A DNA stretch of 64,000 bases from contig NW_026782224.1 of assembly GCF_031769215.1 (NCBI RefSeq), positions 620,001-684,000 of the forward strand. The letters run 5' to 3'. Made by a program: the position numbers and the translations under genes. Shown here one piece after another: positions 372-54,780 of the stretch. Position 1 is the first letter of the stretch; every line of letters begins with the position of its first letter. The notes under the pieces are model-generated. The model had not been told where the DNA came from and made no database searches. It saw only the letters and a list, made by a program, of their open reading frames with translations. Source of the DNA: Ylistrum balloti. Its lineage: Eukaryota.

Positions 372-2187
372 AAATACCGACCAAATATTAGATAATACCG
401 ACCAAATATTAGAAAATACCGACCAAATATTAGAAAATACCGACCTAATATTGGATAATACCGACCAAATATTAGATAATACCGACCAAATATTGGATAA
501 TACCGACCAAATATTAGAAAATACCGACCAAATATTGGATAATACCGACCTAATATTAGATAATACCGACCAAATATTGGATATCACCTACCAAATATTG
601 GATAATACCGACCAAATATTGGATATCACCTACCAAATATTAGATAATACCGACCAAATATTAGATAATACCGACCAAATATTGGATAATACCGACCAAA
701 TATTGGATATCACCTACCAAATATTGGATAATACCGACCAAATATTGGATAATACCGACCAAATATTGGATAATACCGACCAAATATTGGATAATACCGA
801 CCAAATATTGGATATCACCTACCAAATATTAGATAATACCGACCAAATATTAGATAATACCGACCAAATATTGGATAATACCGACCAAATATTGGATATC
901 ACCGACCAAATATTTGATAATACCGACCAAATATTAGATAATACCGACCAAATATTGGATAATACCGACCAAATATTGGATATCACCTACCAAATATTGG
1001 ATATCACCTACCAAATATTGGATATCACCTACCAAATATTGGATATCACCTACCAAATATTGGATATCACCTACCAAATATTGGATATCACCTACCAAAT
1101 ATTGGATTTCACCTCCCAAATATTGGATATCACCTACCAAATATTAGTTAATACCGACCAAATATTAGATAATACCGACCAAATATTGGATATCACCTAC
1201 CAAATATTGGATATCACCTACCAAATATTAGAAAATACCGACCAAATATTAGATAATACCGACCAAATATTGGATAATACCGACCAAATATTAGATAATA
1301 CCGACCAAATATTGGATATCACCTACCAAATATTGGATATCACCTACCAAATATTGGATATCACCTACCAAATATTAGAAAATACCGACCAAATATTGGA
1401 TATCACCTACCAAATATTAGTTAATACCGACCAAATATTAGATAATACCGACCAAATATTGGATAATACCGACCAAATATTAGATAATACCGACCTAATA
1501 TTAGAAAATACCGACCAAATATTAGTTAATACCGACCTGATATTAGATAACACCTACCAAATATTGGATAATACCGACCAAATATTAGATAATACCGACC
1601 AAATATTAGATAATACCGACCAAATATTAGATAATACCGACCAAATATTAGATAATACCGACCAAATATTGGATATCACCTACCAAATATTGGATATCAC
1701 CTACCAAATATTGGATATCACCTACCAAATATTGGATATCACCTACCAAATATTGGATAATACCGACCAAATATTAGAAAATACCGACCAAATATTGGAT
1801 ATCACCTACCAAATATTAGTTAATACCGACCAAATATTAGATAATACCGACCAAATATTAGAAAATACCGACCAAATATTAGTTAATACCTACCAAATAT
1901 TAGATAATACCGACCTGATATTAGATAATACCGACCTAATATTAGATAATACCTACCAAATATTGGATAATACCGACCAAATATTAGATAATACCGACCT
2001 AATATTAGAAAATACCGACCAAATATTAGATAATACCGACCAAATATTGGATAATACCGACCAAATATTGGATATCACCTACCAAATATTAGAAAATACC
2101 GACCAAATTTTAGATAATACCGACCTAATATTAGAAAATACCGACCAAATATTAGTTAATACCGACCAAATATTAGAAAATACCGAC
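372..2187. repeat. 21-bp minisatellite, ~86 copies; source of the 601-aa (DNTDQIL)n ORF
   Basis: Unit GATAATACCGACCAAATATTA/G with a few recurring variants (ATCACCTAC, GAAAAT, GTTAAT, CTAATA). The period is a multiple of 3, so one frame stays open. Confidence 0.97.
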
Positions 2188-2709
2188 TACAGTGCAATGA
2201 TAGTGCATTCGTTGTTACTAAAAATCTACATAGAATACAGCTATAATGGTGGATAATATGAGAGATTATTTCAATAGTATACAGACACGAGCGTAATATC
2301 ATTACCGATTTTTAAATATGTCCCTTTACACTTCCATTCTTTAGGAGTATCACTATATATCGATTTATCGCCGTTTGTCTACATGATACTGTTGAACAGG
2401 ATTACTTCAAAGTTCAGTAACATAATTGACCGGAAATAATTTACCAGTTACATGATTAACTGCATGCTCATGTTCAACGTTATTAAATTTACCTATTAAT
2501 ATACTCTTCAAAGCAACTGTTACCAGTTTTAATCGAAACTGCAACTGAAACCAATTATTTTCATATACAGTGAACTCCTGTTACAATGTGTCGTCACTGA
2601 GCTGAGAGACACAGATTTCCCTACATTTGAATAAAAAAGAAATGTTACAATACAGGAACCGTAATGTCATTTGTTATTGTTGTAAATGCCATTCATAAAA
2701 GTGGAAAAC

Positions 2710-9010: not shown

Positions 9011-10760
9011 TGATATTATAAACACTTTAAGCAACTAAAGCTCAGATAATGAGGTTTCCGACTAAAGTTAACTAACGAGAAACTTAATTAACTAAAACTG
9101 AAATTTTAGTCTAGCTTAAGTGTTTTACATGAAAGACGGTGAAGAGATCTTTTATCGGACAATAATTGCGCCCATGCTGTTGACTAATATAAAAAAGAAA
9201 GCCCCGAGGAACAAGATGGCTGATAACCAAGCACTTGAAAACACGACCCTGACTGTGCAGCGGTAACGACGTACTGGATCCGAGCCACGTGGTCAGGTTT
9301 AGCACCAGTACTTGGCAATAGAAACGAGAATCACCCACAGTGTTCGGTCACATTATGCTTAAAATCACACGTAGGGAATGTCACACAGGTACTTGATGTT
9401 CATTGCATGTCTATAGGTATATCATGTGTTAACGTTAAGGTAAGACGTCCCCGTGGCCGGTAGGAAACATTTACCCTAGCAGTAACACACACATGCCATG
9501 CTCCTGGCTGTTGACGATATATATATGTGATAATTGTCCCTGAATCATTTTCTGTAATTGGAATACGCCACTGGAGTGCTGTGATCGTGCTTCGTTTTGC
9601 CGCGATTATAGATGATATTGATGTGTGTGGGTTGTGATTCTGCATTGAATGTAAGTAACGACCTTTGGGTATCATACTAAAAAATGTACCGAATGTATGT
9701 ATCTGATGAAATACAATCGCGCGCGCATGCTCGCCATCATGGACTCTTTTAAGATATGTATATTTCATTTGTGCTTTAAACATAAAAAAATGAACGGAAC
9801 AGAATTTCGATGTTTATCTTGTAATGGATTTTTGTTTTTGTGTTGATAAACTGTTCTGCATTTAAATACAGGTGTATATAGAAACATGTCTGCTGCATTA
9901 TAGGAACCAAACATTCAAAACAATTTTATGTTAGTAAAAAAAACATACTTAGATAGACATGTCATTGTTTTTTTCTCCGTTTCAGATAAGTTGCTCGGAT
10001 TGGGCTGATGTTTCTTTTCTCGGATACCAGACCTAAATGAACGACTTAGTTTGTGGGTAAGTTATCAGGATAAGTGAATGCATGTGTGTCTATTCTATAG
10101 GTTGTATCTATAACATCTATTAAGTGTTCAAGAAGGGCTGCTGTGAGGAATTGGTTTATGGTAATGTCAGAAAACGGATTCCTGGACATCAACTCATCGA
10201 TGATAAATGGAATTCCGTCAGAGTTGTGAGAAGTATAGGGTTGTAAATTGATGAAATTCTTTTCAGTAATATTAAAAGAATTTTCATTGATAATAAATTT
10301 AAGTAAATTCTTTGAATATTCAAAGCTTTCTGTTTCGGGATTAAAAATTATGGCACAAAGAAGAACAGATCTCGTCAATGACCGTTATGTACTTACATAC
10401 GTTCAAAGTTTTAATTTTAAAAAAGTTGTTGATATGATGAAGTATACGTATGATGTACTCCCTTGAATCTTGGAGTAGCGGTTGGTACGATAATAGAACG
10501 GTAATCCTTAGTTTAATTTACTGTTCATTAAACCCTACCCTGCTGCGATCTGAATCAGATGTAGGTACATTTCATCAGGGCTGATATCCTCTCTGTGTAG
10601 TTCTCTCAGCGTTACGGCCACAGTACTCAGAAGTCATCCACAGGATCGTAATATGAGGACATTGATTGGGAAACTCATGCTGCCATGTTCGAAAATATGG
10701 CATTCCCTCATGAAAATCAATTAAATAGGCGCAAACTACGAACCCCCCTCCCTCCACTAT

Positions 10761-15463: not shown

Positions 15464-15791
15464 NNNNNNNNNNNNNNNNNNNNNNNNNNNNNNNNNNNNN
15501 NNNNNNNNNNNNNNNNNNNNNNNNNNNNNNNNNNNNNNNNNNNNNNNNNNNNNNNNNNNNNNNNNNNNNNNNNNNNNNNNNNNNNNNNNNNNNNNNNNNN
15601 NNNNNNNNNNNNNNNNNNNNNNNNNNNNNNNNNNNNNNNNNNNNNNNNNNNNNNNNNNNNNNNNNNNNNNNNNNNNNNNNNNNNNNNNNNNNNNNNNNNN
15701 NNNNNNNNNNNNNNNNNNNNNNNNNNNNNNNNNNNNNNNNNNNNNNNNNNNNNNNNNNNNNNNNNNNNNNNNNNNNNNNNNNNNNNNNNNN
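15464..15791. other. Assembly gap (328 N)
   Basis: Run of N; the ORFs spanning it are artefacts. Confidence 1.
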
Positions 15792-41524: not shown

Positions 41525-41734
41525 NNNNNNNNNNNNNNNNNNNNNNNNNNNNNNNNNNNNNNNNNNNNNNNNNNNNNNNNNNNNNNNNNNNNNNNNNNNN
41601 NNNNNNNNNNNNNNNNNNNNNNNNNNNNNNNNNNNNNNNNNNNNNNNNNNNNNNNNNNNNNNNNNNNNNNNNNNNNNNNNNNNNNNNNNNNNNNNNNNNN
41701 NNNNNNNNNNNNNNNNNNNNNNNNNNNNNNNNNN
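41525..41734. other. Assembly gap (210 N)
   Basis: Run of N. Confidence 1.
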
Positions 41735-45758: not shown

Positions 45759-48700
45759 ACCCTGAGTAAGTCACACAGTCGACATAACCCAGTCACACAG
45801 TCGACATAACCATGAGTAAGTCACACAGTCGACATAACCCTGAGTAAGTCACACAGTCGACATAACCCAGTCACTCAGTCGACATAACCCAGTCACACAG
45901 TCTACATAACCCTAAGTAAGTCACACAGTCGACATAACCCAGTCACACAGTCTACATAACCATGAGTAAGTCACACAGTCGACATAACCCTGAGTAAGTC
46001 ACACAATCGACATAACCCTAGGTAAGTCACACAGTCGACATAACCCTGAGTAAGTCACACAGTTGATATAACCCTGAGTAAGTCATACAGTTGATATAAC
46101 CCTGAGTAAGTCACACAATCGACATAAACCTTAGTAAGTCACACAGTCGACATAACCCTAGGTAAGTCGCACAGTCGACATAACCCTAGGTAAGTCACAC
46201 AGTCGACATAACCCTGAGTAAGTCACACAGTCGACATAACCCTAGGTAGGTCACACAGTCGACATAACCCTGAGTAAGTCACACAGTTGATATAACCCTG
46301 AGTAAGTCACACAGTCGACATAACCCTGAGTAAGTCACACAGTCGACATAACGCTGAGTAAGTCACACAGTTGATATAACCCTTAGTAAGTCACACAGTC
46401 GACATAACCCTAGGTAAGTCGCACAGTAGAGATAACCCTGAGTAAGTCACACAGTCGACATAAACCTGAGTAAGTCACACAGTCGACATAACCCTAGGTA
46501 AGTCACACAGTCGACATAACCCTAGGTAAGTCACACAGTCGACATAACCCTAAGTAAGTCACACAGTCGACATAACGCTGAGTAAGTCACACAGTTGATA
46601 TAACCCTGAGTAAGTCACACAGTCGACATAACCCTTAGTAAGTCACACAGTCGACATAACCCTAGGTAAGTCGCACAGTTGATATAACCCTGAGTAAGTC
46701 ACACAGTCGACATAACCCTGAGTAAGTCACACAGTCGACATATCCCTAGGTAAGTCTCACAGTCGACATAACCCTAGGTAAGTCACACAGTCGACATAAC
46801 CCTAAGTAAGTCACACAGTCGACATAACGCTGAGTAAGTCACACAGTTGATATAACCCTGAGTAAGTCACACAGTCGACATAACCCTTAGTAAGTCACAC
46901 AGTCGACATAACCCTAGGTAAGTCGCACAGTTGATATAACCCTGAGTAAGTCACACAGTCGACATAACCCTGAGTAAGTCACACAGTCGACATAACGCTG
47001 AGTTAGTCACACAGTTGATATAACCCTGAGTAAGTCACACAGTCGACATAACCCTTAGTAAGTCACACAGTCGACATAACCCTAGGTAAGTCGCACAGTC
47101 GACATAACCCTAGGTAAGTCACACAGTTGATATAACCCTGAGTAAGTCACACAGTCGACATAACCCAGTCACTCAGTCGACATAACCCAGTCACACAGTC
47201 TACATAACCCTAAGTAAGTCACACAGTCGACATAACCCAGTCACACAGTCGACATAACCCAGTCACACAGTCTACATAACCATGAGTAAGTCACACAGTC
47301 GACATAACCCTGAGTAAGTCACACAGTCGACATAACCCTAGGTAAGTCACACAGTCGACATAACCCTGAGTAAGTCACACAGTTGATATAACCCTGAGTA
47401 AGTCATACAGTTGATATAACCCTGAGTAAGTCACACAGTCGACATAACCCTTAGTAAGTCACACAGTCGACATAACCCTAGGTAAGTCGCACAGTCGACA
47501 TAACCCTAGGTAAGTCACACAGTCGACATAACCCTGAGTAAGTCACACAGTCGACATAACCCTAGGTAGGTCACACAGTCGACATAACCCTAGGTAAGTC
47601 ACACAGTTGATATAACCCTGAGTAAGTCACACAGTCGACATAACCCTGAGTAAGTCACACAGTCGACATAACGCTGAGTAAGTCACACAGTTGATATAAC
47701 CCTTAGTAAGTCACACAGTCGACATAACCTTAGGTAAGTCGCACAGTTGATATAACCCTGAGTAGGTCACACAGTCGACATAACCCTGAGTAAGTCACAC
47801 AGTCGACATAAGCCTTCTAAAGTCCCACAGTCGACATAACCCTAGGTAAGTCACACAGTCGACATAACCCTAAGTAAGTCACACAGTCGACATAACGCTG
47901 AGTAAGTCACACAGTTGATATAACCCTGAGTAAGTCACACAGTCGACATAACCCTTAGTAAGTCACACAGTCGACATAACCCTAGGTAAGTCGCACAGTT
48001 GATATAACCCTGAGTAGGTCACACAGTCGACATAACCCTGAGTAAGTCACACAGTCGACATAACCCTAGGTAAGTCGCACAGTCGACATAACCCTAGGTA
48101 AGTCACACAGTCGACATAACCCTAAGTAAGTCACACAGTCGACATAACGCTGAGTAAGTCACACAGTTGATATAACCCTGAGTAAGTCACACAGTCGACA
48201 TAACCCTTAGTAAGTCACACAGTCGACATAACCCTAGGTAAGTCGCACAGTTGATATAACCCTGAATAAGTCACACAGTCGACATAACGCTGAGTAAGTC
48301 ACACAGTTGATATAACCCTGAGTAAGTCACACAGTCGACATAACCCTTAGTAAGTCACACAGTCGACATAACCCTAGGTAAGTCGCACAGTCGACATAAC
48401 CCTAGGTAAGTCACACAGTTGATATAACCCTGAGTAAGTCACACAGTCGACATAACCCTAAGTAAGTCACACAGTTGATATAACCCTAAGGTAAGTCACA
48501 CAGTTGATATAACCCTAGGTAAGTCACACAATTGATATAACCCTTAGTAAGTCACACAGTTGATATAACCCTTAGTAAGTCACACAGTCGACATAACCCT
48601 AAGTAAGTCACACAGTTGATATAACCCTAAGGTAAGTCACACAGTTGATATAACCCTTAGTAAGTCACACAGTTGATATAATCCTTAGTAAGTCACACAG

Positions 48701-48792
48701 TTGATATAATCCTTAGTAAGTCACACAGTCGACATAACCCTTAGTAAGTCACACAGTCGACATAGCCTAAGGTAAGTCAAACAGTGGACATA
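45759..48792. repeat. 28-bp minisatellite, ~108 copies, with 22-bp deletion variants and a large block duplication
   Basis: Unit AGTAAGTCACACAGTCGACATAACCCTG; the variant CATAACCCAGTCACTCAGTC occurs at 45861 and 47159. Confidence 0.98.
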
Positions 48793-48898
48793 TATAGACG
48801 ATCATCAATCGGTGATTACAGAAACAGCTTGAACAGGACATCAGATCGTCGTGTCGTCATCAGCTGACTCTCAGCTCTCATTCAGCAATCGCCGTCAC

Positions 48899-49767
48899 CA
48901 CTGTAGTGATCGTACGACTGATAGGACTATTCAAGATGGCGGACCAACGTAACACCGGAAGGTAAGCTCTGCTTTCAAAAAGTAATATCCATAATTTATA
49001 TACTCACTATGATCGTGACACATATTGTATCTGATTCGCAAATAGTGCTAATATTGTTGTACGTATCTATTTGGATGATGATAAACTTAAAATGCAATGA
49101 AATCTGCATGTAGACTTTGTCAGTATGCCGATTTGTTAGATCCAAACGGATGTGAGCTTAACTTTTGGCCCTAGCTAAAAGTATTAAATACATCCAGTCA
49201 GACTTTTAATGTTAAATTAAAGATTAGATAAGCCTCTATTAGAATGACAATCTTCTCTTGCGGAATCGGAAGCGTGATTGGAGAGAAAAAACACAGGAAA
49301 TTTTGACCATGAGATGGCTCGGTCTCCGTACATTTTGAGATGAGACCGAGCCTTGCATGGTCAAAATTTCCTGTGTTTTTTTCTTCAATCACGCTTCCCA
49401 TTCAGTCACAGGAGATTGTCCTTCGATTAGAGGCTTATCAAATCTTCAACTTGAAATTAAAACTCTGACTGAATTTGTTCAAGTGTTTTAGCTAGGGCTG
49501 ATAGTTGAGCTCACACCCGCTCGGATCCAACAGATCGGCATGTTGGCGAGGTTTACACGCAGATTGCACTACATTTTAAGTCTATCATCATCCAGATAGA
49601 TACGTACAACAATATTAGCTCTATTTGAGAATCAGATACAATGTGTGTCATGATCATAGTGAGTATATAAATTATGGATATTACCGTTTGAAAGCAGAGC
49701 TTACCTTCCGGTGTTACGTTGGTCCGCCATCTTGAATAGTCCTATGCATCGCACGATCACGACAGTG
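48899..49767. mobile_element. 869-bp foldback non-autonomous DNA transposon with CAC termini and 5-bp TSD (Transib/RAG-like superfamily signature)
   Basis: Arms of ~425 bp align end to end around a ~15-nt loop at ~49327-49341. Termini read CACTGTA and CACTGTC inward; GTCAC is duplicated at 48894-48898 and 49768-49772. The element itself is certain; the superfamily assignment is inference. Confidence 0.9.
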
Positions 49768-49916
49768 GTCACATCTCCTTTTATTTATTTTTTTAGTAAC
49801 ATTTTCTAAATAGCCATTTTTATAATCTGGTCTCATATTTGGTAACGTTGAAACAGTATGATAAATACAGAGAAAAGTGATAACAATGTTTTAATTCAAT
49901 GTTATTATACTTACAG

Positions 49917-51683
49917 CCTCATGACGAAATGATAAGAGATGATTTGCATACTGGAGCAACCGGAAGCTATCAAAATGCCTCTAATTTGGGAATGTACCAC
50001 GTGACTGTCAACTTAACGACGACGAACAGCAACAATGATACGTTAAGGCTCTCTACCGGAAAGTCAAGCAACGCCTCAGCTCCTGTACTTTTTGGTTCGG
50101 AAGAATGGTATCGCCAACAGCAAGCACAGTTCTATCAATCTTACGATCCTAGTGTCGGTTACAACACCGCAGCAGTTCTCGGTGGCATGTTAGTACTACT
50201 AGTTATATATGTATTCTACCGGACTAAAGTTAGAAAGCATTTAATAAATCTGGTCAGACACATCAAGGCACAGTACAAACTAAAACACCAAGCCGAATAC
50301 GGTGCTCCGGAGTCTGCCGAACAAATGACATATTCATTCGGAAACGGACCTCCAACCTCAGACGGAAATGACAACTGCGATGGTAACAACGCCGCTCAAA
50401 GTGAGATTAAATCGAAAGGTTCCAACATCCCGGTTCAGTTTCTCAGTTTTGACAGTGGTACGTTATCCGAGCATGCCAACACCGTCGGTGCTTGTAACAG
50501 GGATGAGATATTGAGGAGAGTTCGGCCTACCATATCATTTGACCGACAGCATTCTGAGGATGAATCGAAACAACTTCCCGTTGTTGTCATGGACATGGAA
50601 ATAGCCACAGCTGACTGGGTACAAAAACAACATCAATTACAACATCAGTTTCTTAGTCCGGGTGGAATCATTTTGAAAGTGAAATCAGACACCATATGTC
50701 CACCCAACAACGATAGCTACCCATCCGCCCAAACGTTACATCCTAATGCTAAGTGTTGTGCTAACCGTCAGTGCTTAAATGCCAGGCGACGACAATACAG
50801 TTGTGGTGCCCGTTCACATTATTCTTTGGATCTTAATAAAAGCATGCCGTTTTTGGAAGTTAGTGATCCTACTTTGAAAGGGATAGAGCCATGTCTCCAT
50901 GGTAACCGTAGGAAAGTACAACTTAAAGCCACAAAATTTCCAAGTGTTTCATCGGAACCAAAAACTCCTCTATTGATTAAATGTACAAAATTTTCAAGTT
51001 TGTCATCCGAACCAGTGCGGTCGGGGCGACCATCAGATCTCACGTCACAGCCTAGCCAAGACAGTGGACAACGCACGCCCATATGTCGCACCCCTCAACC
51101 GCAGACACCTGTACCACGCTCGCCCCTACCGCAACGACCACATACATTAGTGAAACAGCATACATTGACACTTCCGGTACAGCAGCACACTTTAACAGTG
51201 CCGTCACAAAAACTTAACCCGCCATCACCTCATCTCTTACGACCACCACCTCTACAGCACCGATCCCTACAGGCACCGTGTCATAAAATGACGCCATCAT
51301 CTCAAAAACACACTACCCCTCAACACATTACGCCAATTATAAAGATTCAGAATTATGATAAATCACAACGAAGAACGAACTCAGTGTCGAGAAACGAAAG
51401 TGTTGACCATGATTCGGTAAGCTCTAGTTCGTCAGAGGACGCCCAAATCTACCGTATACCGGCCGAACAGTGGCAGTCCCCTAGACCTCCTCGAAGGGGC
51501 ATACTCGTACGGGAAAACGCCGTGACGAGTCTAAGTGCCTGTCCTGTTTGTGATAAGATTCAAAGTTCCCGATCTCCACGGAAACAAGTTAGCCTGGACA
51601 CAGGTTTCCACCAACTTCGCCTCCCCTCTCCCACACCAGGGTCGAACTCGCATCATGTGTCCAACATGGAGACTCCATTATAA
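49917..51683 (+). CDS. Single large coding exon of an uncharacterised single-pass membrane protein (~585 aa)
   Basis: 594-codon non-repetitive ORF in otherwise stop-rich DNA. Its first codons (TTATTATACTTACAG) are a good splice acceptor, so the real start is probably ATG 49929 or 49992, or lies in an upstream exon. Four N-glycosylation sequons (NAS, NLT, NDT, NAS) precede a TM helix TAAVLGGMLVLLVIYVFY (~50166-50219) followed by RTKVRK; the tail is Ser/Pro/Gln-rich and ends ETPL. Confidence 0.9.
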   Translation, partial: PHDEMIRDDLHTGATGSYQNASNLGMYHVTVNLTTTNSNNDTLRLSTGKSSNASAPVLFGSEEWYRQQQAQFYQSYDPSVGYNTAAVLGGMLVLLVIYVFYRTKVRKHLINLVRHIKAQYKLKHQAEYGAPESAEQMTYSFGNGPPTSDGNDNCDGNNAAQSEIKSKGSNIPVQFLSFDSGTLSEHANTVGACNRDEILRRVRPTISFDRQHSEDESKQLPVVVMDMEIATADWVQKQHQLQHQFLSPGGIILKVKSDTICPPNNDSYPSAQTLHPNAKCCANRQCLNARRRQYSCGARSHYSLDLNKSMPFLEVSDPTLKGIEPCLHGNRRKVQLKATKFPSVSSEPKTPLLIKCTKFSSLSSEPVRSGRPSDLTSQPSQDSGQRTPICRTPQPQTPVPRSPLPQRPHTLVKQHTLTLPVQQHTLTVPSQKLNPPSPHLLRPPPLQHRSLQAPCHKMTPSSQKHTTPQHITPIIKIQNYDKSQRRTNSVSRNESVDHDSVSSSSSEDAQIYRIPAEQWQSPRPPRRGILVRENAVTSLSACPVCDKIQSSRSPRKQVSLDTGFHQLRLPSPTPGSNSHHVSNMETPL

Positions 51684-51983: not shown

Positions 51984-52450
51984 TATGTCATTTTCTGTGT
52001 TTCCACCTCGGTATTTAATCAGGGATTTATGGTAATCGTGACACTGATAATTGTATACTTCCATTTAATTTGGTGATTGAAATCGGGAATGCAGCATTAA
52101 TTTTATCCGCTTATGAAACCCAAACACTGTCCCCATGGTCCCTAAATGGTCCCTGTTGGTCGCGGACGGTTATACATTGTATAAATCAGGCGGACTGACT
52201 TGTTGGTAATTCACTAGAATGGTTCCTTGTGATCAGTGTTTTGATATTTTTGTATACCAGAGATGAGTTACATGTGTTGTAAGTGTTTATACGTCATTGT
52301 ATGTTTTAAGACACAAATGCGACTGTTCTCCTTGAGATCGATATCTTATAGATTTCATTTTTATTGCTTGTAGATTTTAAGTTTGTTTGATTTGTATACG
52401 ATTGTCTACAAGTAATAATTTAAATTATTTTAACTGGAGACATACAGTAG

Positions 52451-54780
52451 TCGTTCAGAAAGAGAAGTGACCGTTGAGATAACGAAGTGACCGTTGAGAT
52501 AAGGAAGTGACCGTTGAGATAATGAAATGACCGTTGAGATAACGAAGTGACCGTTGAGATAGGAAAGTGACCGTTGAGATAGGAAAGTGACCATTGAGAT
52601 AATGAAGTGACCGTTGAGATAACGAAGTGACCGTTGAGATAGGAAAGTGACCGTTGAGATAGGAAAGTGACCGTTGAGATAATGAAGTGACCGTTGAGAT
52701 AACGAAGTGACCGTTGAGATAGGAAAGTGACCGTTGAGATAGGAAAGTGACCGTTGAGATAAGGAACTGACCATTGAGATAGGGAAGTGACCGTTGAAAT
52801 AAGGAAGTGACCGTTGAGATAAGGAAGTGACCGTTGATATAGGGAAGTGACCGTTGAGATAGGGAAGTGGCCGTTGAGATAAGGAAGTGACCGTTGAGAT
52901 AGGGAATTGACCGTTGAGAGAGGGAAGTGACCGTGAAGATAGGAAAGTGACCATTGAGATAATGAAGTGACCGTTGAGATAACGAAGTGACCGTTGAGAT
53001 AGGAAAGTGACCATTGAGATAAGGAACTGACCATTGAGATAGGGAAGTGTCCGTCGAAATCAGGAAGTGACCGTTGAGATAAGGAAGTGACCGTTGATAT
53101 GGGGAAGTGACCGTTGAGATAAGGAAGTGACCGTTGAGATAAGGAAGTGACCGTTGAGATAGGGAATTGACCGTTGAGATAGAAAAGTGACCGTGGAGAT
53201 AGGAAAGTTACCGTTGAGATAAGGAAATAAACGTTGAGATAAGGAAGTGACTTTGAGATAAGGAAGTGACCGTTGAGATAAGGAAGCGACCGTTGAGATA
53301 ACGAAATGACCGTTGAGATAACGAAGTGACCGATGAGATAGAGAAGTGACCGTTGAGATAACTAAGTGACCGTTGAGAAGGAAGTGACCGATGAGATAAC
53401 GACGTGAACGATGAGATAAAGAAGGACTTTTGAGATAGGGAAGTGACCGCTGAGATAGGGAAGTGGTCGTTGAGATAAGAAAGTGACCGTTGAGATAAGG
53501 AAGTGACCGTTGATATAGGGAAGTGACCGTTGAGATAGGGAAGTAGCCGTTGAGATAAGGAAGTGACCGTTGAGATAGGGAAGTGACCGTTGAGAGAGGA
53601 AAGTGACCGTGGAGATAGGAAAGTGACCATTGAGATAATGAAGTGACCGTTGAGATAACGAAGTGACCGTTGAGATAGGAAAGTGACCGTTGAGATAAGG
53701 AACTGACCATTGAGATAGGGAAGTGACCGTTGAAATAAGGAAGTGACCGTTGAGATAAGGAAGTGACCGTTGATATGGGGAAGTGACCGTTGAGATAGGG
53801 AAGTGGCCGTTGAGATAAGGAAGTGACCGTTGAGATAAGGAAGTGACCGTTGAGATAGGGAATTGACCGTTGAGATAGGAAAGTGACCGTGGAGATAGGA
53901 AAGTTACCGTTGAGATAAGGAAATAAACGTTGAGATAAGGAAGTGACTTTGAGATAAGGAAGTGACCGTTGAGATAAGGAAGCGACCGTTGAGATAACGA
54001 AATGACCGTTGAGATAACGAAGTGACCGATGAGATAGAGAAGTGACCGTTGAGATAACTAAGTGACCGTTGAGATAAGGAAGTGACCGATGAGATAACGA
54101 AGTGAACGATGAGATAAAGAAGGACTGTTGAGATAAGGAAGTGACCGTTGAGATAGGGAAGTGGCCGTTGATATGGGGAAGTGACCGTTGAGATAAGGAA
54201 GTGACCGTTGAGATAAGGAAGTGACCGTTGAGATAGGGAAGTGACCGTTGAGATAAGGAAGTGACCGTTGAGATAAGGAAGCGACCGTGGAGATAACGAA
54301 ATGACCGTTGAGATAACGAAATGACCGTTGAGATAACGAAATGACCGTTGAGATAAGGAAGTGACCGTTGAGATAAGGAAGTGACCGTTGAGATAGGGAA
54401 GTGGCCGTTGAGATAAGGAAGTGACCGTTGAGATAGGGAAGTGACCGTTGAGATAAGGAAGTGACCGTTGAGATAAGGAAGCGACCGTGGAGATAACGAA
54501 ATGACCGTTGAGATAACGAAATGACCGTTGAGATAACGAAATGACCGTTGAGATAACGAAGTGACCGATGAGATAGGGAAGCTACCGTTGAGATAGTGAA
54601 GTGACCTTTGAGATAGGGAAGTGACCTTTGAAATAGGGAAGCTACCATTGTGATAGGGAAGTGACCTTTGAGACAGGGAAGTGACCTTTGAGATAGGGAA
54701 GCTACCGTTGAGACAGGGAGGTGACCTTTGAGATAAGGAAGCTATCGTTGAGATACGAAAGTGACCGTTGAGATAAGGAA
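52451..54780. repeat. 21-bp purine-rich minisatellite, ~110 copies, with block duplications
   Basis: Unit GAAGTGACCGTTGAGATAAGG; the rare variant AAGGAAATAAACGTTGAG recurs at ~53221 and ~53917. Explains the minus-strand ORFs at 52420-54648. Confidence 0.98.

What the first reader, a model, noticed from the sequence alone, without database searches (positions are those of the whole stretch)
48894..49772. Giant foldback element with Transib/RAG-transposon hallmarks
Seen: an almost perfectly palindromic 869-bp element (arms ~425 bp, roughly 85% identical by eye, best conserved at the outer ends and beside the loop), CAC at both termini and an exact 5-bp duplication GTCAC. Known: CAC termini with a 5-bp TSD characterise Transib and RAG-like (ProtoRAG/RAGL) transposons, whereas CACTA/EnSpm make 2-3-bp TSDs, and the 2- and 3-bp flanks here do not match. 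RAGL elements are reported from bivalves. As I recall the amphioxus ProtoRAG TIRs, they have heptamer CACTATG and a distal GCCATCTTG. Here that 9-mer lies 26 nt from each terminal 7-mer but in the opposite orientation (48932-48940, 49726-49734), and CACTATG occurs internally in both arms (49005-49011, 49655-49661). Inference: a non-autonomous derivative of a possibly undescribed Transib/RAGL family.
Basis: partly seen in the sequence, partly recalled or inferred. Interest (0 to 1): 0.78.

Follow-up and report, generated by a model that had tools for sequence, protein, structure and literature searches.

The report
Foldback DNA transposon with Transib-like ends
This is an old, fixed copy of a multi-copy hairpin-shaped "jumping gene" in a scallop genome whose ends (CAC...GTG, 5-bp target duplication, a YY1-type box) look like those of the transposon family that gave rise to the antibody-gene recombinase RAG, but the enzyme that moved it was not found.

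Summary
Positions 48899-49767 form an 869-bp near-palindrome whose arms are 87% complementary over 427 aligned pairs. It ends in CAC...GTG and is flanked by GTCAC on both sides.

Contigs from four public runs show a repeat family with tens of copies. Their homology breaks exactly at 49767, so the right boundary is confirmed independently. 17 of 19 family-majority letters restore arm pairing, so the family ancestor was a near-perfect foldback and this copy is old. Both junctions are present in all four runs and no empty allele was seen. In those runs the left flank reads GTTAC, a 4/5 match.

With these boundaries only a 5-bp duplication fits. CAC ends plus 5 bp point to Transib/RAGL within the CACTA-Transib clade.

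TR5 is GCCATCTTG, 27/31 bp from the heptamer. That 9-mer is a YY1 site. Here it lies 26 bp in but inverted, followed by an ETS-like box, an ATG and a splice donor, which reads as an inward promoter/first-exon module.

The protostome RAGL TIR consensus and the Transib nonamer are not matched. No other full copy or transposase could be fetched.

Verdict: a real non-autonomous foldback transposon. Transib-type mobilisation is likely (about 0.55) but unproven. The same stretch was also noted once more by this scan (s1-263000).

The parts
48894..48898 (.). Left copy of the putative 5-bp target-site duplication. It reads GTCAC in the assembly and GTTAC in four other individuals.
   Evidence: The SNP 48896 C>T is seen in all 4 runs on the contig bridging 48735-48949.
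48899..49767 (.). The foldback element, 869 bp, consisting of two arms of about 430 bp and a loop of about 15 nt.
   Evidence: Multi-copy depth inside it and many different flanks starting after 49767.
48899..48905 (+). Left terminal 7-mer CACTGTA, the heptamer position.
   Evidence: It matches the RSS heptamer CACAGTG at 5/7, ProtoRAG CACTATG at 5/7 and Transib CACAATG at 4/7 (consensus sequences).
48932..48940 (+). CAAGATGGC, a YY1-type box (AAGATGGCGG at 48933-48942). It is the reverse complement of ProtoRAG TR5 and lies 26 nt from the 7-mer.
48936..48967 (+). Exon-like module: ATG GCG GAC CAA CGT AAC ACC GGA AG, then the splice donor GTAAGC (48962-48967). An ETS-like CCGGAAG lies at 48955-48961.
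   Evidence: Read directly. The function is inferred, because no RNA data were available.
49005..49011 (+). Internal CACTATG, mirrored at 49655-49661. It is followed by ATGATCGTG, which loosely resembles the tip sequence CACTGTAGTGATCGT.
   Evidence: There is no repeat family of subterminal motifs, so this is probably of little weight.
49325..49339 (.). Centre (loop) of the palindrome. Other family members carry different and longer palindromic sequence here.
   Evidence: for the loop. Loose ends at 49324, 49341 and 49355 are mutually reverse-complementary and run on for 130-145 nt.
49699..49734 (-). Mirror module of the right arm: YY1 box (49726-49734), ATG (49730-49728) and donor GTAAGC (49704-49699), all pointing inward.
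49761..49767 (-). Right terminal 7-mer. It reads CACTGTC on the minus strand, and the family boundary lies after 49767.
   Evidence: At 49767, 9-12 contigs per run become loose ends with dissimilar flanks, with 2-4 more at 49768.
49768..49772 (.). Right copy of the putative 5-bp target-site duplication, GTCAC.
49917..51683 (+). Context: the coding exon of a conserved scallop gene for a single-pass membrane protein. The conserved acceptor ttacag|CCTCATGACGAA precedes the ATG at 49929. The element ends 150 bp upstream of that acceptor.

Best explanation
This is an old, fixed copy of a non-autonomous foldback (very long TIR) cut-and-paste DNA transposon that exists in tens of copies in this scallop.

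The family ancestor was an almost perfect palindrome. It probably arose as an inverted duplication of the 5' end of an autonomous element, namely the tip, an inward YY1/ETS promoter, a short first exon and part of the intron.

It encodes nothing. It would have been moved in trans by a transposase that recognises the CAC tips and makes a 5-bp staggered cut in the target. That signature is the one of Transib/RAG1-like (RAGL) enzymes, which cleave by nick-hairpin at the CAC border.

Shown here: the palindrome, the multi-copy family, the exact right boundary, the fit of 5 bp only at this copy, the age of the copy, its fixation in the sampled animals, and the presence and orientation of the motifs. 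Inferred: the transposase superfamily, the promoter/first-exon role of the ends, and the origin of the element by inverted duplication.
For: Palindrome.

Family and boundary: summed contig depth is 200-1000 inside the element against 10-18 in the single-copy right flank. 22-26 distinct contigs per run cover the tip region. 9-12 contigs per run diverge exactly after 49767 into unlike flanks. An internally deleted derivative is seen, with a joint from 49138 to 49715 and a TA filler, which is typical of DNA-transposon gap repair.

Ancestral perfect foldback: 17 of 19 family-majority letters restore arm pairing.

TSD: only k=5 matches. The target GTSAC is palindromic, like the CASTG/CAWTG targets of mosquito Transib-N families (PMC1131882). 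The local target is more GC-rich (48%) than the window (38%).

CAC ends with C at position 3 argue against hAT, whose third base is always G. The CMCT clade shares CA..TG ends with TSDs of 2-5 bp, and 5 bp is the Transib value.

A YY1 box identical to ProtoRAG TR5 lies 26 bp from the 7-mer, against 27/31 bp in ProtoRAG.

Earlier scan notes report RAG1/Transib-like transposases in this genome. This is a lead only and was not tested.
Against: The TSD length rests on a single copy. In four other individuals the left repeat is GTTAC.

No second complete copy, no longer coding member and no transposase could be fetched.

Beyond CACT the ends do not match the protostome RAGL TIR consensus. There is no A-rich TR2 and no Transib nonamer. 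The YY1 box is inverted relative to ProtoRAG.

An ORF-based survey found only one Transib among 27 bivalve genomes. The RAG1-like family noted earlier in this genome is said to have CAT ends and no TSD.

The flank consensus of the other copies begins ATGTT, which is not GC-rich.
Confidence: 0.55

Rival explanations
1. The element is a non-autonomous member of a CMC lineage (EnSpm/CACTA, Chapaev or Mirage) or of an undescribed CMCT lineage other than Transib. These lineages also have CAC(TG) tips.
For: The tip CACTG is classic for CACTA-like elements. CMC elements are present in all mollusc genomes surveyed, whereas Transib is nearly absent. The CMCT clade shares CA..TG termini and has TSDs of 2-5 bp.
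Against: With the boundary fixed, flanks of 2, 3 and 4 bp do not match while 5 bp matches exactly. No subterminal repeat arrays of the kind typical of EnSpm are present.
Confidence: 0.15
2. The element is a non-autonomous hAT5 element, a hAT lineage that makes 5-bp TSDs.
For: [quoted passage not shown] An earlier scan note reports another young foldback element in this genome with an 8-bp TSD (untested).
Against: The third nucleotide of hAT termini is always G, and here it is C (PMC1131882 Fig. S7 legend). The tip does not fit the usual hAT YARNG pattern (own knowledge).
Confidence: 0.07
3. The 5-bp match is a coincidence and the family belongs to some other or unknown superfamily, with no TSD or a decayed one. 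One candidate is the TSD-less RAG1-like two-gene family noted elsewhere in this genome.
For: Only one copy was examined. Four of five sampled individuals have a 4/5 match, for which the chance probability is about 0.016.
Against: An exact 5/5 match has a chance probability of about 0.001. An old insertion is expected to have acquired a mutation in a TSD, since the arms are about 6% diverged each. The family noted earlier is said to have CAT ends rather than CAC ends.
Confidence: 0.15
4. Whatever moved it, this copy now serves the host. It would supply a promoter and a non-coding first exon, or a hairpin RNA, to the membrane-protein gene 150 bp downstream.
For: An inward-facing YY1/ETS/ATG/donor module sits in the left arm, on the same strand as the gene. 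A conserved acceptor lies at 49916/49917, so the gene needs an upstream exon. The outer 200 bp of the arms are significantly better preserved than the middle. The insertion is fixed in all samples. The same idea was raised in note s1-263000.
Against: No RNA run holds the stretch. G:U-compatible substitutions are balanced between the strands, 18 against 14, so there is no sign of selection for an RNA hairpin. Rfam gives only sub-threshold hairpin look-alikes. Orthologues in three other scallops have the same acceptor, but their upstream DNA is not alignable, so the ancestral exon 1 is unknown.
Confidence: 0.15
5. It is a local, single-locus inverted duplication or a hairpin-RNA gene and not a mobile element.
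For: There is only one copy in the 64-kb window.
Against: Multi-copy depth, dozens of distinct contigs, and many different flanks beginning at one position.
Confidence: 0.02

Closest known systems
Non-autonomous Transib elements (the Transib-N families of insects and sea urchin; Kapitonov & Jurka 2005, PMC1131882)
   Same: They share the 5'-CAC...GTG-3' tips, the 5-bp TSD, a palindromic 5-bp target (GTSAC here, CASTG/CAWTG there), the absence of coding capacity and a heptamer-like first 7 nt.
   Different: The arms here are about 430 bp rather than TIRs of about 38-60 bp. There is no A-rich nonamer 23 or 12 bp from the heptamer. The 7-mer is CACTGTA/C rather than CACAATG. The host is a scallop, a group in which Transib is hardly recorded. 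The partner transposase is unknown.
ProtoRAG / RAGL-B transposons (amphioxus; oysters and a ribbon worm among protostomes)
   Same: They share the CAC tip and the 5-bp TSD. The exact 9-mer of TR5 (GCCATCTTG, a YY1 site) lies at nearly the same distance from the heptamer, 26 bp against 27/31 bp. In ProtoRAG both TIRs carry promoter activity directed inward (PMC7481187), and both ends here carry an inward promoter-like module.
   Different: The 9-mer is in the opposite orientation. TR2 (the AAA at positions 8-10) and the protostome consensus CACTWMCAAACKTYKBB are not matched. No RAG1L or RAG2L gene is linked to it. TR5 was reported as specific to lancelets.
Foldback-type long-TIR derivatives of DNA transposons (for example Drosophila FB and Galileo; own knowledge)
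   Same: The element consists almost wholly of two long inverted arms around a variable centre. It is multi-copy, non-coding and prone to deletions at the centre.
   Different: FB has arms built of tandem repeats and a 9-bp TSD, and Galileo (P superfamily) has a 7-bp TSD. Here the arms are unique sequence and the TSD is 5 bp.
CACTA/EnSpm, Chapaev and Mirage (CMC)
   Same: They share CACTG-type tips and membership of the same wider CMCT clade as Transib.
   Different: Their TSDs of 2-4 bp do not fit this copy, and no subterminal repeat arrays are present.

Membership tests
Transib superfamily | Termini 5'-CAC...GTG-3', defined by where copies stop being alike | tested here: met
   The family boundary lies after 49767 (...ACAGTG). 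The left tip CACTGTA is placed by symmetry. Loose ends at the left tip were not among the rows printed.
Transib superfamily | 5-bp target-site duplication | tested here: inconclusive
   This copy has GTCAC on both sides, and only k=5 fits. However, this is one copy only, and the left repeat is GTTAC in four other individuals. The TSD was not tabulated across copies.
Transib superfamily | TIR made of a CACAATG-like heptamer, a 23- or 12-bp spacer and an A-rich nonamer | tested here: not met
   The heptamer matches 4/7 (CACTGTA). Positions 31-39 read ATTCAAGAT, which is not an A-rich nonamer (against the consensus). Many Transib TIRs have little similarity to the nonamer (introduction).
Transib superfamily | An autonomous partner encoding a Transib/RAG1-core DDE transposase between the same ends | not testable with these tools
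   The host genome could not be searched. Scans of the metagenome, viral and prokaryote collections and an ORF-based search gave nothing.
RAGL / ProtoRAG | Heptamer CACTATG-like followed by an A-rich TR2 (protostome consensus CACTWMCAAACKTYKBB) | tested here: not met
   The tips are CACTGTAGTGATCGTAC and CACTGTCGTGATCGTGC. Only CACT (plus C7 in one arm) agrees, and positions 8-10 are GTG rather than AAA.
RAGL / ProtoRAG | TR5 GCCATCTTG 27/31 bp inside the heptamer, read inward | tested here: not met
   The 9-mer is present at 26 bp, but as its reverse complement CAAGATGGC when read inward.
RAGL / ProtoRAG | A convergent RAG1L-RAG2L gene pair | not testable with these tools
   The element is non-coding, with its longest ORF at 67 aa across the loop. 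No longer member was retrieved.
CMC (EnSpm/Chapaev/Mirage) | TSD of 2-4 bp flanking the CAC tips | tested here: not met
   AC against GT, CAC against GTC, and TCAC against GTCA.
hAT (hAT5) | Third base of the terminus is G (YAG...) | tested here: not met
   The third base is C at both tips. The rule comes from PMC1131882.
Foldback (FB)/MULE-like | TSD of 9-10 bp and arms made of tandem repeats | tested here: not met
   There is no match at 9 or 10 bp, and the arms contain no internal direct repeats.

The most novel reading that the evidence does not exclude
The family would be the non-autonomous face of an undescribed scallop Transib/RAGL lineage whose ends, like those of amphioxus ProtoRAG, carry a YY1 site about 26 bp from the heptamer together with an inward promoter at both ends. 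That would mean the YY1-TIR partnership, so far reported as lancelet-specific, is either ancient or has evolved repeatedly in RAG-type transposons. It would also mean that the longer family members hinted at by the loose ends at the centre may be long-TIR autonomous elements.
Probability: 0.2. Interest if true: 0.7.

Novelty: new member of a known kind. Interest (0 to 1): 0.45.

Why it matters
Transib/RAG-like transposons are the source of the V(D)J recombinase, and they are scarcely documented in bivalves. One survey found a single Transib ORF in 27 bivalve genomes. About 30% of a scallop genome is 'unclassified' repeat.

A well-bounded family of tens of copies with CAC tips and a 5-bp TSD gives a concrete handle, its terminal 60-130 bp, with which to fish out the autonomous element from the assembly.

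If that element is RAG1-like, the YY1 box in its ends would bear directly on how host factors were recruited to RAG-type transposon ends before the RSS nonamer evolved. If it is not, the element is one more ordinary MITE-like repeat sitting in a gene's 5' region.

Tried and rejected
(1) Empty-site test in sister species. The adjacent gene's orthologues were fetched from Mizuhopecten yessoensis, Pecten maximus and Argopecten irradians with 10-kb flanks. Only the coding exon and about 40 bp upstream align, so no conclusion about an empty site could be drawn.

(2) Empty allele within the species. No contig joins 48898 to 49768 in four runs, and both junctions are bridged. The insertion is fixed in that sample.

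(3) Other copies. There are none in the window. A 21-mer scan of metagenome contigs gave one chance hit in a 52%-GC bacterial contig, L004. Scans of viral and prokaryote genomes gave nothing.

(4) Retrieving other copies through spurious ORFs called on Logan contigs.

(5) Rfam. Only sub-threshold miRNA-shaped matches at the loop were found, so this was rejected as a known RNA family.

(6) Selection for an RNA hairpin. G:U-compatible transitions are balanced between the strands, so this was rejected.

(7) Subterminal repeats. None were found. The internal CACTATG is a weak look-alike of the tip.

(8) The neighbouring 594-codon ORF as a transposase. It has no Pfam hit, contains a transmembrane helix and is conserved as a host gene in scallops, mussels and oysters, so this was rejected.

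(9) The paper on YY1 motifs in core promoters (PMC1891339) is not held. Statements about YY1 boxes overlapping start codons therefore rest on my own knowledge.

The two N runs (15464-15791 and 41525-41734) were left untouched.

Full report
WHAT IS THERE

Positions 48899-49767 form an 869-bp near-palindrome. The repeat finder reports arms 48894-49290 and 49376-49772 at 86% complementarity. A gapped alignment extends pairing almost to the centre, with 427 aligned pairs at 87.4% identity, 32 transitions and 22 transversions. As RNA it folds into one hairpin of -588 kcal/mol, z = -54.

The tips read CACTGTA... and ...GACAGTG. The five bases outside each tip are GTCAC. With these boundaries only k=5 gives a direct repeat among k=2-10.

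IT IS A MOBILE-ELEMENT FAMILY, AND THE BOUNDARY IS INDEPENDENTLY CONFIRMED

The window holds only this copy. Logan contigs of four public DNA runs were laid on 47400-51300 at 85% or more likeness. The runs carry two organism labels, but both differ from the window by only about 0.3% in the unique flank.

- Summed depth is 200-1000 inside the element, against 10-18 in the single-copy right flank.
- 22-26 distinct contigs per run cover the tip region.
- 9-12 contigs per run stop matching exactly after 49767 and continue into mutually unlike sequence (flank consensus agreement 0.45). Another 2-4 stop at 49768, which is about the number expected to share the next base by chance.
- One internally deleted derivative is seen, with a joint from 49138 to 49715 and a TA filler.

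This is the signature of tens of dispersed copies that share a sharp end at ...CAGTG. The left boundary follows by symmetry. Loose ends at the left tip were not among the rows the tool printed.

THE ANCESTOR WAS A NEAR-PERFECT FOLDBACK, AND THIS COPY IS OLD AND FIXED

At 19 positions the majority of family contigs differ from this copy. At 17 of them the family letter restores pairing with the other arm. The 12.6% arm divergence is therefore mostly decay after insertion, about 6% per arm.

- G:U-compatible transitions are balanced between the strands, 18 against 14, so nothing suggests selection for an RNA hairpin.
- Both junctions of this insertion are bridged by contigs in all four runs, and no empty-site joint appears.
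- In all four runs 48896 is T, so the left repeat is GTTAC there. That is expected for an old TSD, but it means the exact 5/5 match is seen only in the assembled individual.
- Other family members carry different, longer and still palindromic sequence at the centre. The loose ends at 49324 and 49355 are reverse complements of each other and run on for 130-145 nt. This copy therefore has a shortened centre, and full-length members are longer.

An oddity remains unexplained. The outer 200 bp of the arms are much better preserved than the middle: 12/199 mismatches against 33/150, p = 1.7e-5.

ANATOMY OF THE ENDS

Reading inward from each tip, the order is:

- CACTGTA (or CACTGTC in the right arm);
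- 26 nt of spacer;
- CAAGATGGC, extended to AAGATGGCGG, a YY1-type box;
- an ATG lying inside that box at 48936, followed by 26 nt of open frame that contains an ETS-like CCGGAAG;
- a consensus splice donor AAG|GTAAGC at 48962;
- AT-rich sequence full of stops.

I read this as an inward-facing promoter and first-exon module inherited from the 5' end of an autonomous element. That is inference, because no RNA run holds the stretch. The chance expectation for the 9-mer is 0.29 per window on both strands.

COMPARISON WITH THE LITERATURE

TR1 is CACTATG and TR5 is GCCATCTTG, separated by 27 bp in the 5' TIR and 31 bp in the 3' TIR and read inward (PMC8289069; supplementary alignment and oligos). 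But TR5 is a YY1-binding site that drives and tunes ProtoRAG transcription and end recognition, and it was described as lancelet-specific (PMC7481187). Here the same 9-mer sits at nearly the same distance but inverted. A YY1 box is a common promoter element, so independent acquisition is at least as likely as homology.

- The protostome RAGL TIR consensus CACTWMCAAACKTYKBB (PMC7204232) agrees only at CACT.
- The A-rich TR2 is absent.
- The Transib consensus is CACAATG-N23-AAAAAAATC (PMC1131882). It matches 4/7 in the heptamer, and there is no nonamer.
- In favour of Transib, that paper records 5-bp TSDs as the superfamily's hallmark, palindromic 5-bp targets (CASTG/CAWTG) that resemble GTSAC here, and the rule that hAT ends always have G at position 3, where this element has C.
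- Later work shows that hAT5 also makes 5-bp TSDs. It also shows that EnSpm, Mirage, Chapaev and Transib form one clade with CA..TG ends and TSDs of 2-5 bp (PMC12730594).
- A bivalve-wide ORF survey found only one Transib (PMC10294476).
- Earlier notes of this scan report RAG1/Transib-like transposases in this same scallop genome. The one that was followed up is said to have CAT ends and no TSD. These are leads that I did not test.

CONTEXT

The genome is a scallop's. The 594-codon ORF at 49899-51683 is not a transposase. It has no Pfam hit and contains a transmembrane helix. It is 82-86% identical to uncharacterised proteins of Mizuhopecten, Pecten and Argopecten, with weaker relatives in mussels and oysters.

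Its true start is the ATG at 49929, preceded by a conserved 3' splice site (ttacag|CCTCATGACGAA) in all four scallops. The foldback therefore lies in the gene's 5' intron or promoter, 150 bp upstream of that acceptor. Upstream DNA of the three orthologues does not align, so no cross-species empty site could be examined.

A 3-kb minisatellite (28 bp x 110) ends 106 bp upstream of the element. A 20-bp x 117 array follows the gene.

VERDICT

It is a real, bounded, multi-copy, non-autonomous foldback DNA transposon, with confidence of about 0.95 for that part. CAC tips and a 5-bp duplication make a Transib/RAG1-like transposase the most likely mover (about 0.55). That rests on one polymorphic TSD and on end features that only partly fit the known TIR consensus sequences. 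The partner enzyme was not found.

The ProtoRAG-like 9-mer is genuine but is a YY1 site in the opposite orientation. Attempts to obtain more copies all failed. The decisive test is a simple whole-assembly BLAST of the termini.

Noticed in passing
window 45759-48792: A 3-kb minisatellite of 28-bp units x 110 (ACCCTGAGTAAGTCACACAGTCGACATA, 88% matches) ends 106 bp upstream of the foldback. Each unit contains GTCAC and a CACAGTC motif. No link to the element was established.
   Followed up: partly
window 52452-54780: A second minisatellite of 20-bp units x 117 (CGTTGAGATAAGGAAGTGAC) lies just downstream of the membrane-protein gene. It explains the run of minus-strand ORFs at 52420-54648 and their weak, spurious Pfam hits.
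   Followed up: partly
window 49917-49931, and L001-L003 around 9988-10003: A conserved mini-uORF (ATG ACG AAA TGA, or ATG ACG CCA/GCA TGA in the orthologues) has a stop that overlaps the main ATG of the gene. It lies directly after a conserved splice acceptor in four scallop species, which suggests a termination-reinitiation arrangement.
   Followed up: no
window 49099-49250 versus 48899-49098: The two arms have decayed unevenly: 22% mismatches in the middle against 6% in the outer 200 bp (p = 1.7e-5). Possible causes are constraint on the promoter-like ends, arm-to-arm conversion, or a mosaic origin.
   Followed up: partly
window 49324-49355 (loose ends): Other family members continue at the centre with additional palindromic sequence (CTTAGTAACATGATCACA... 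and its reverse complement) for at least 130-145 nt. This copy therefore has a truncated centre, and longer members, possibly coding ones, exist.
   Followed up: no
window 451-2256: A 601-codon ORF has coiled-coil-type Pfam matches (DUF745, COG3_N, PMC2NT). It is probably an exon of a host gene or a low-complexity frame.
   Followed up: no
L004 5647-5667: The only metagenome hit to the 21-mer ACGTTGGTCCGCCATCTTGAA lies in a 52%-GC bacterial-looking contig and has no further similarity to the element. It is a chance match.
   Followed up: yes
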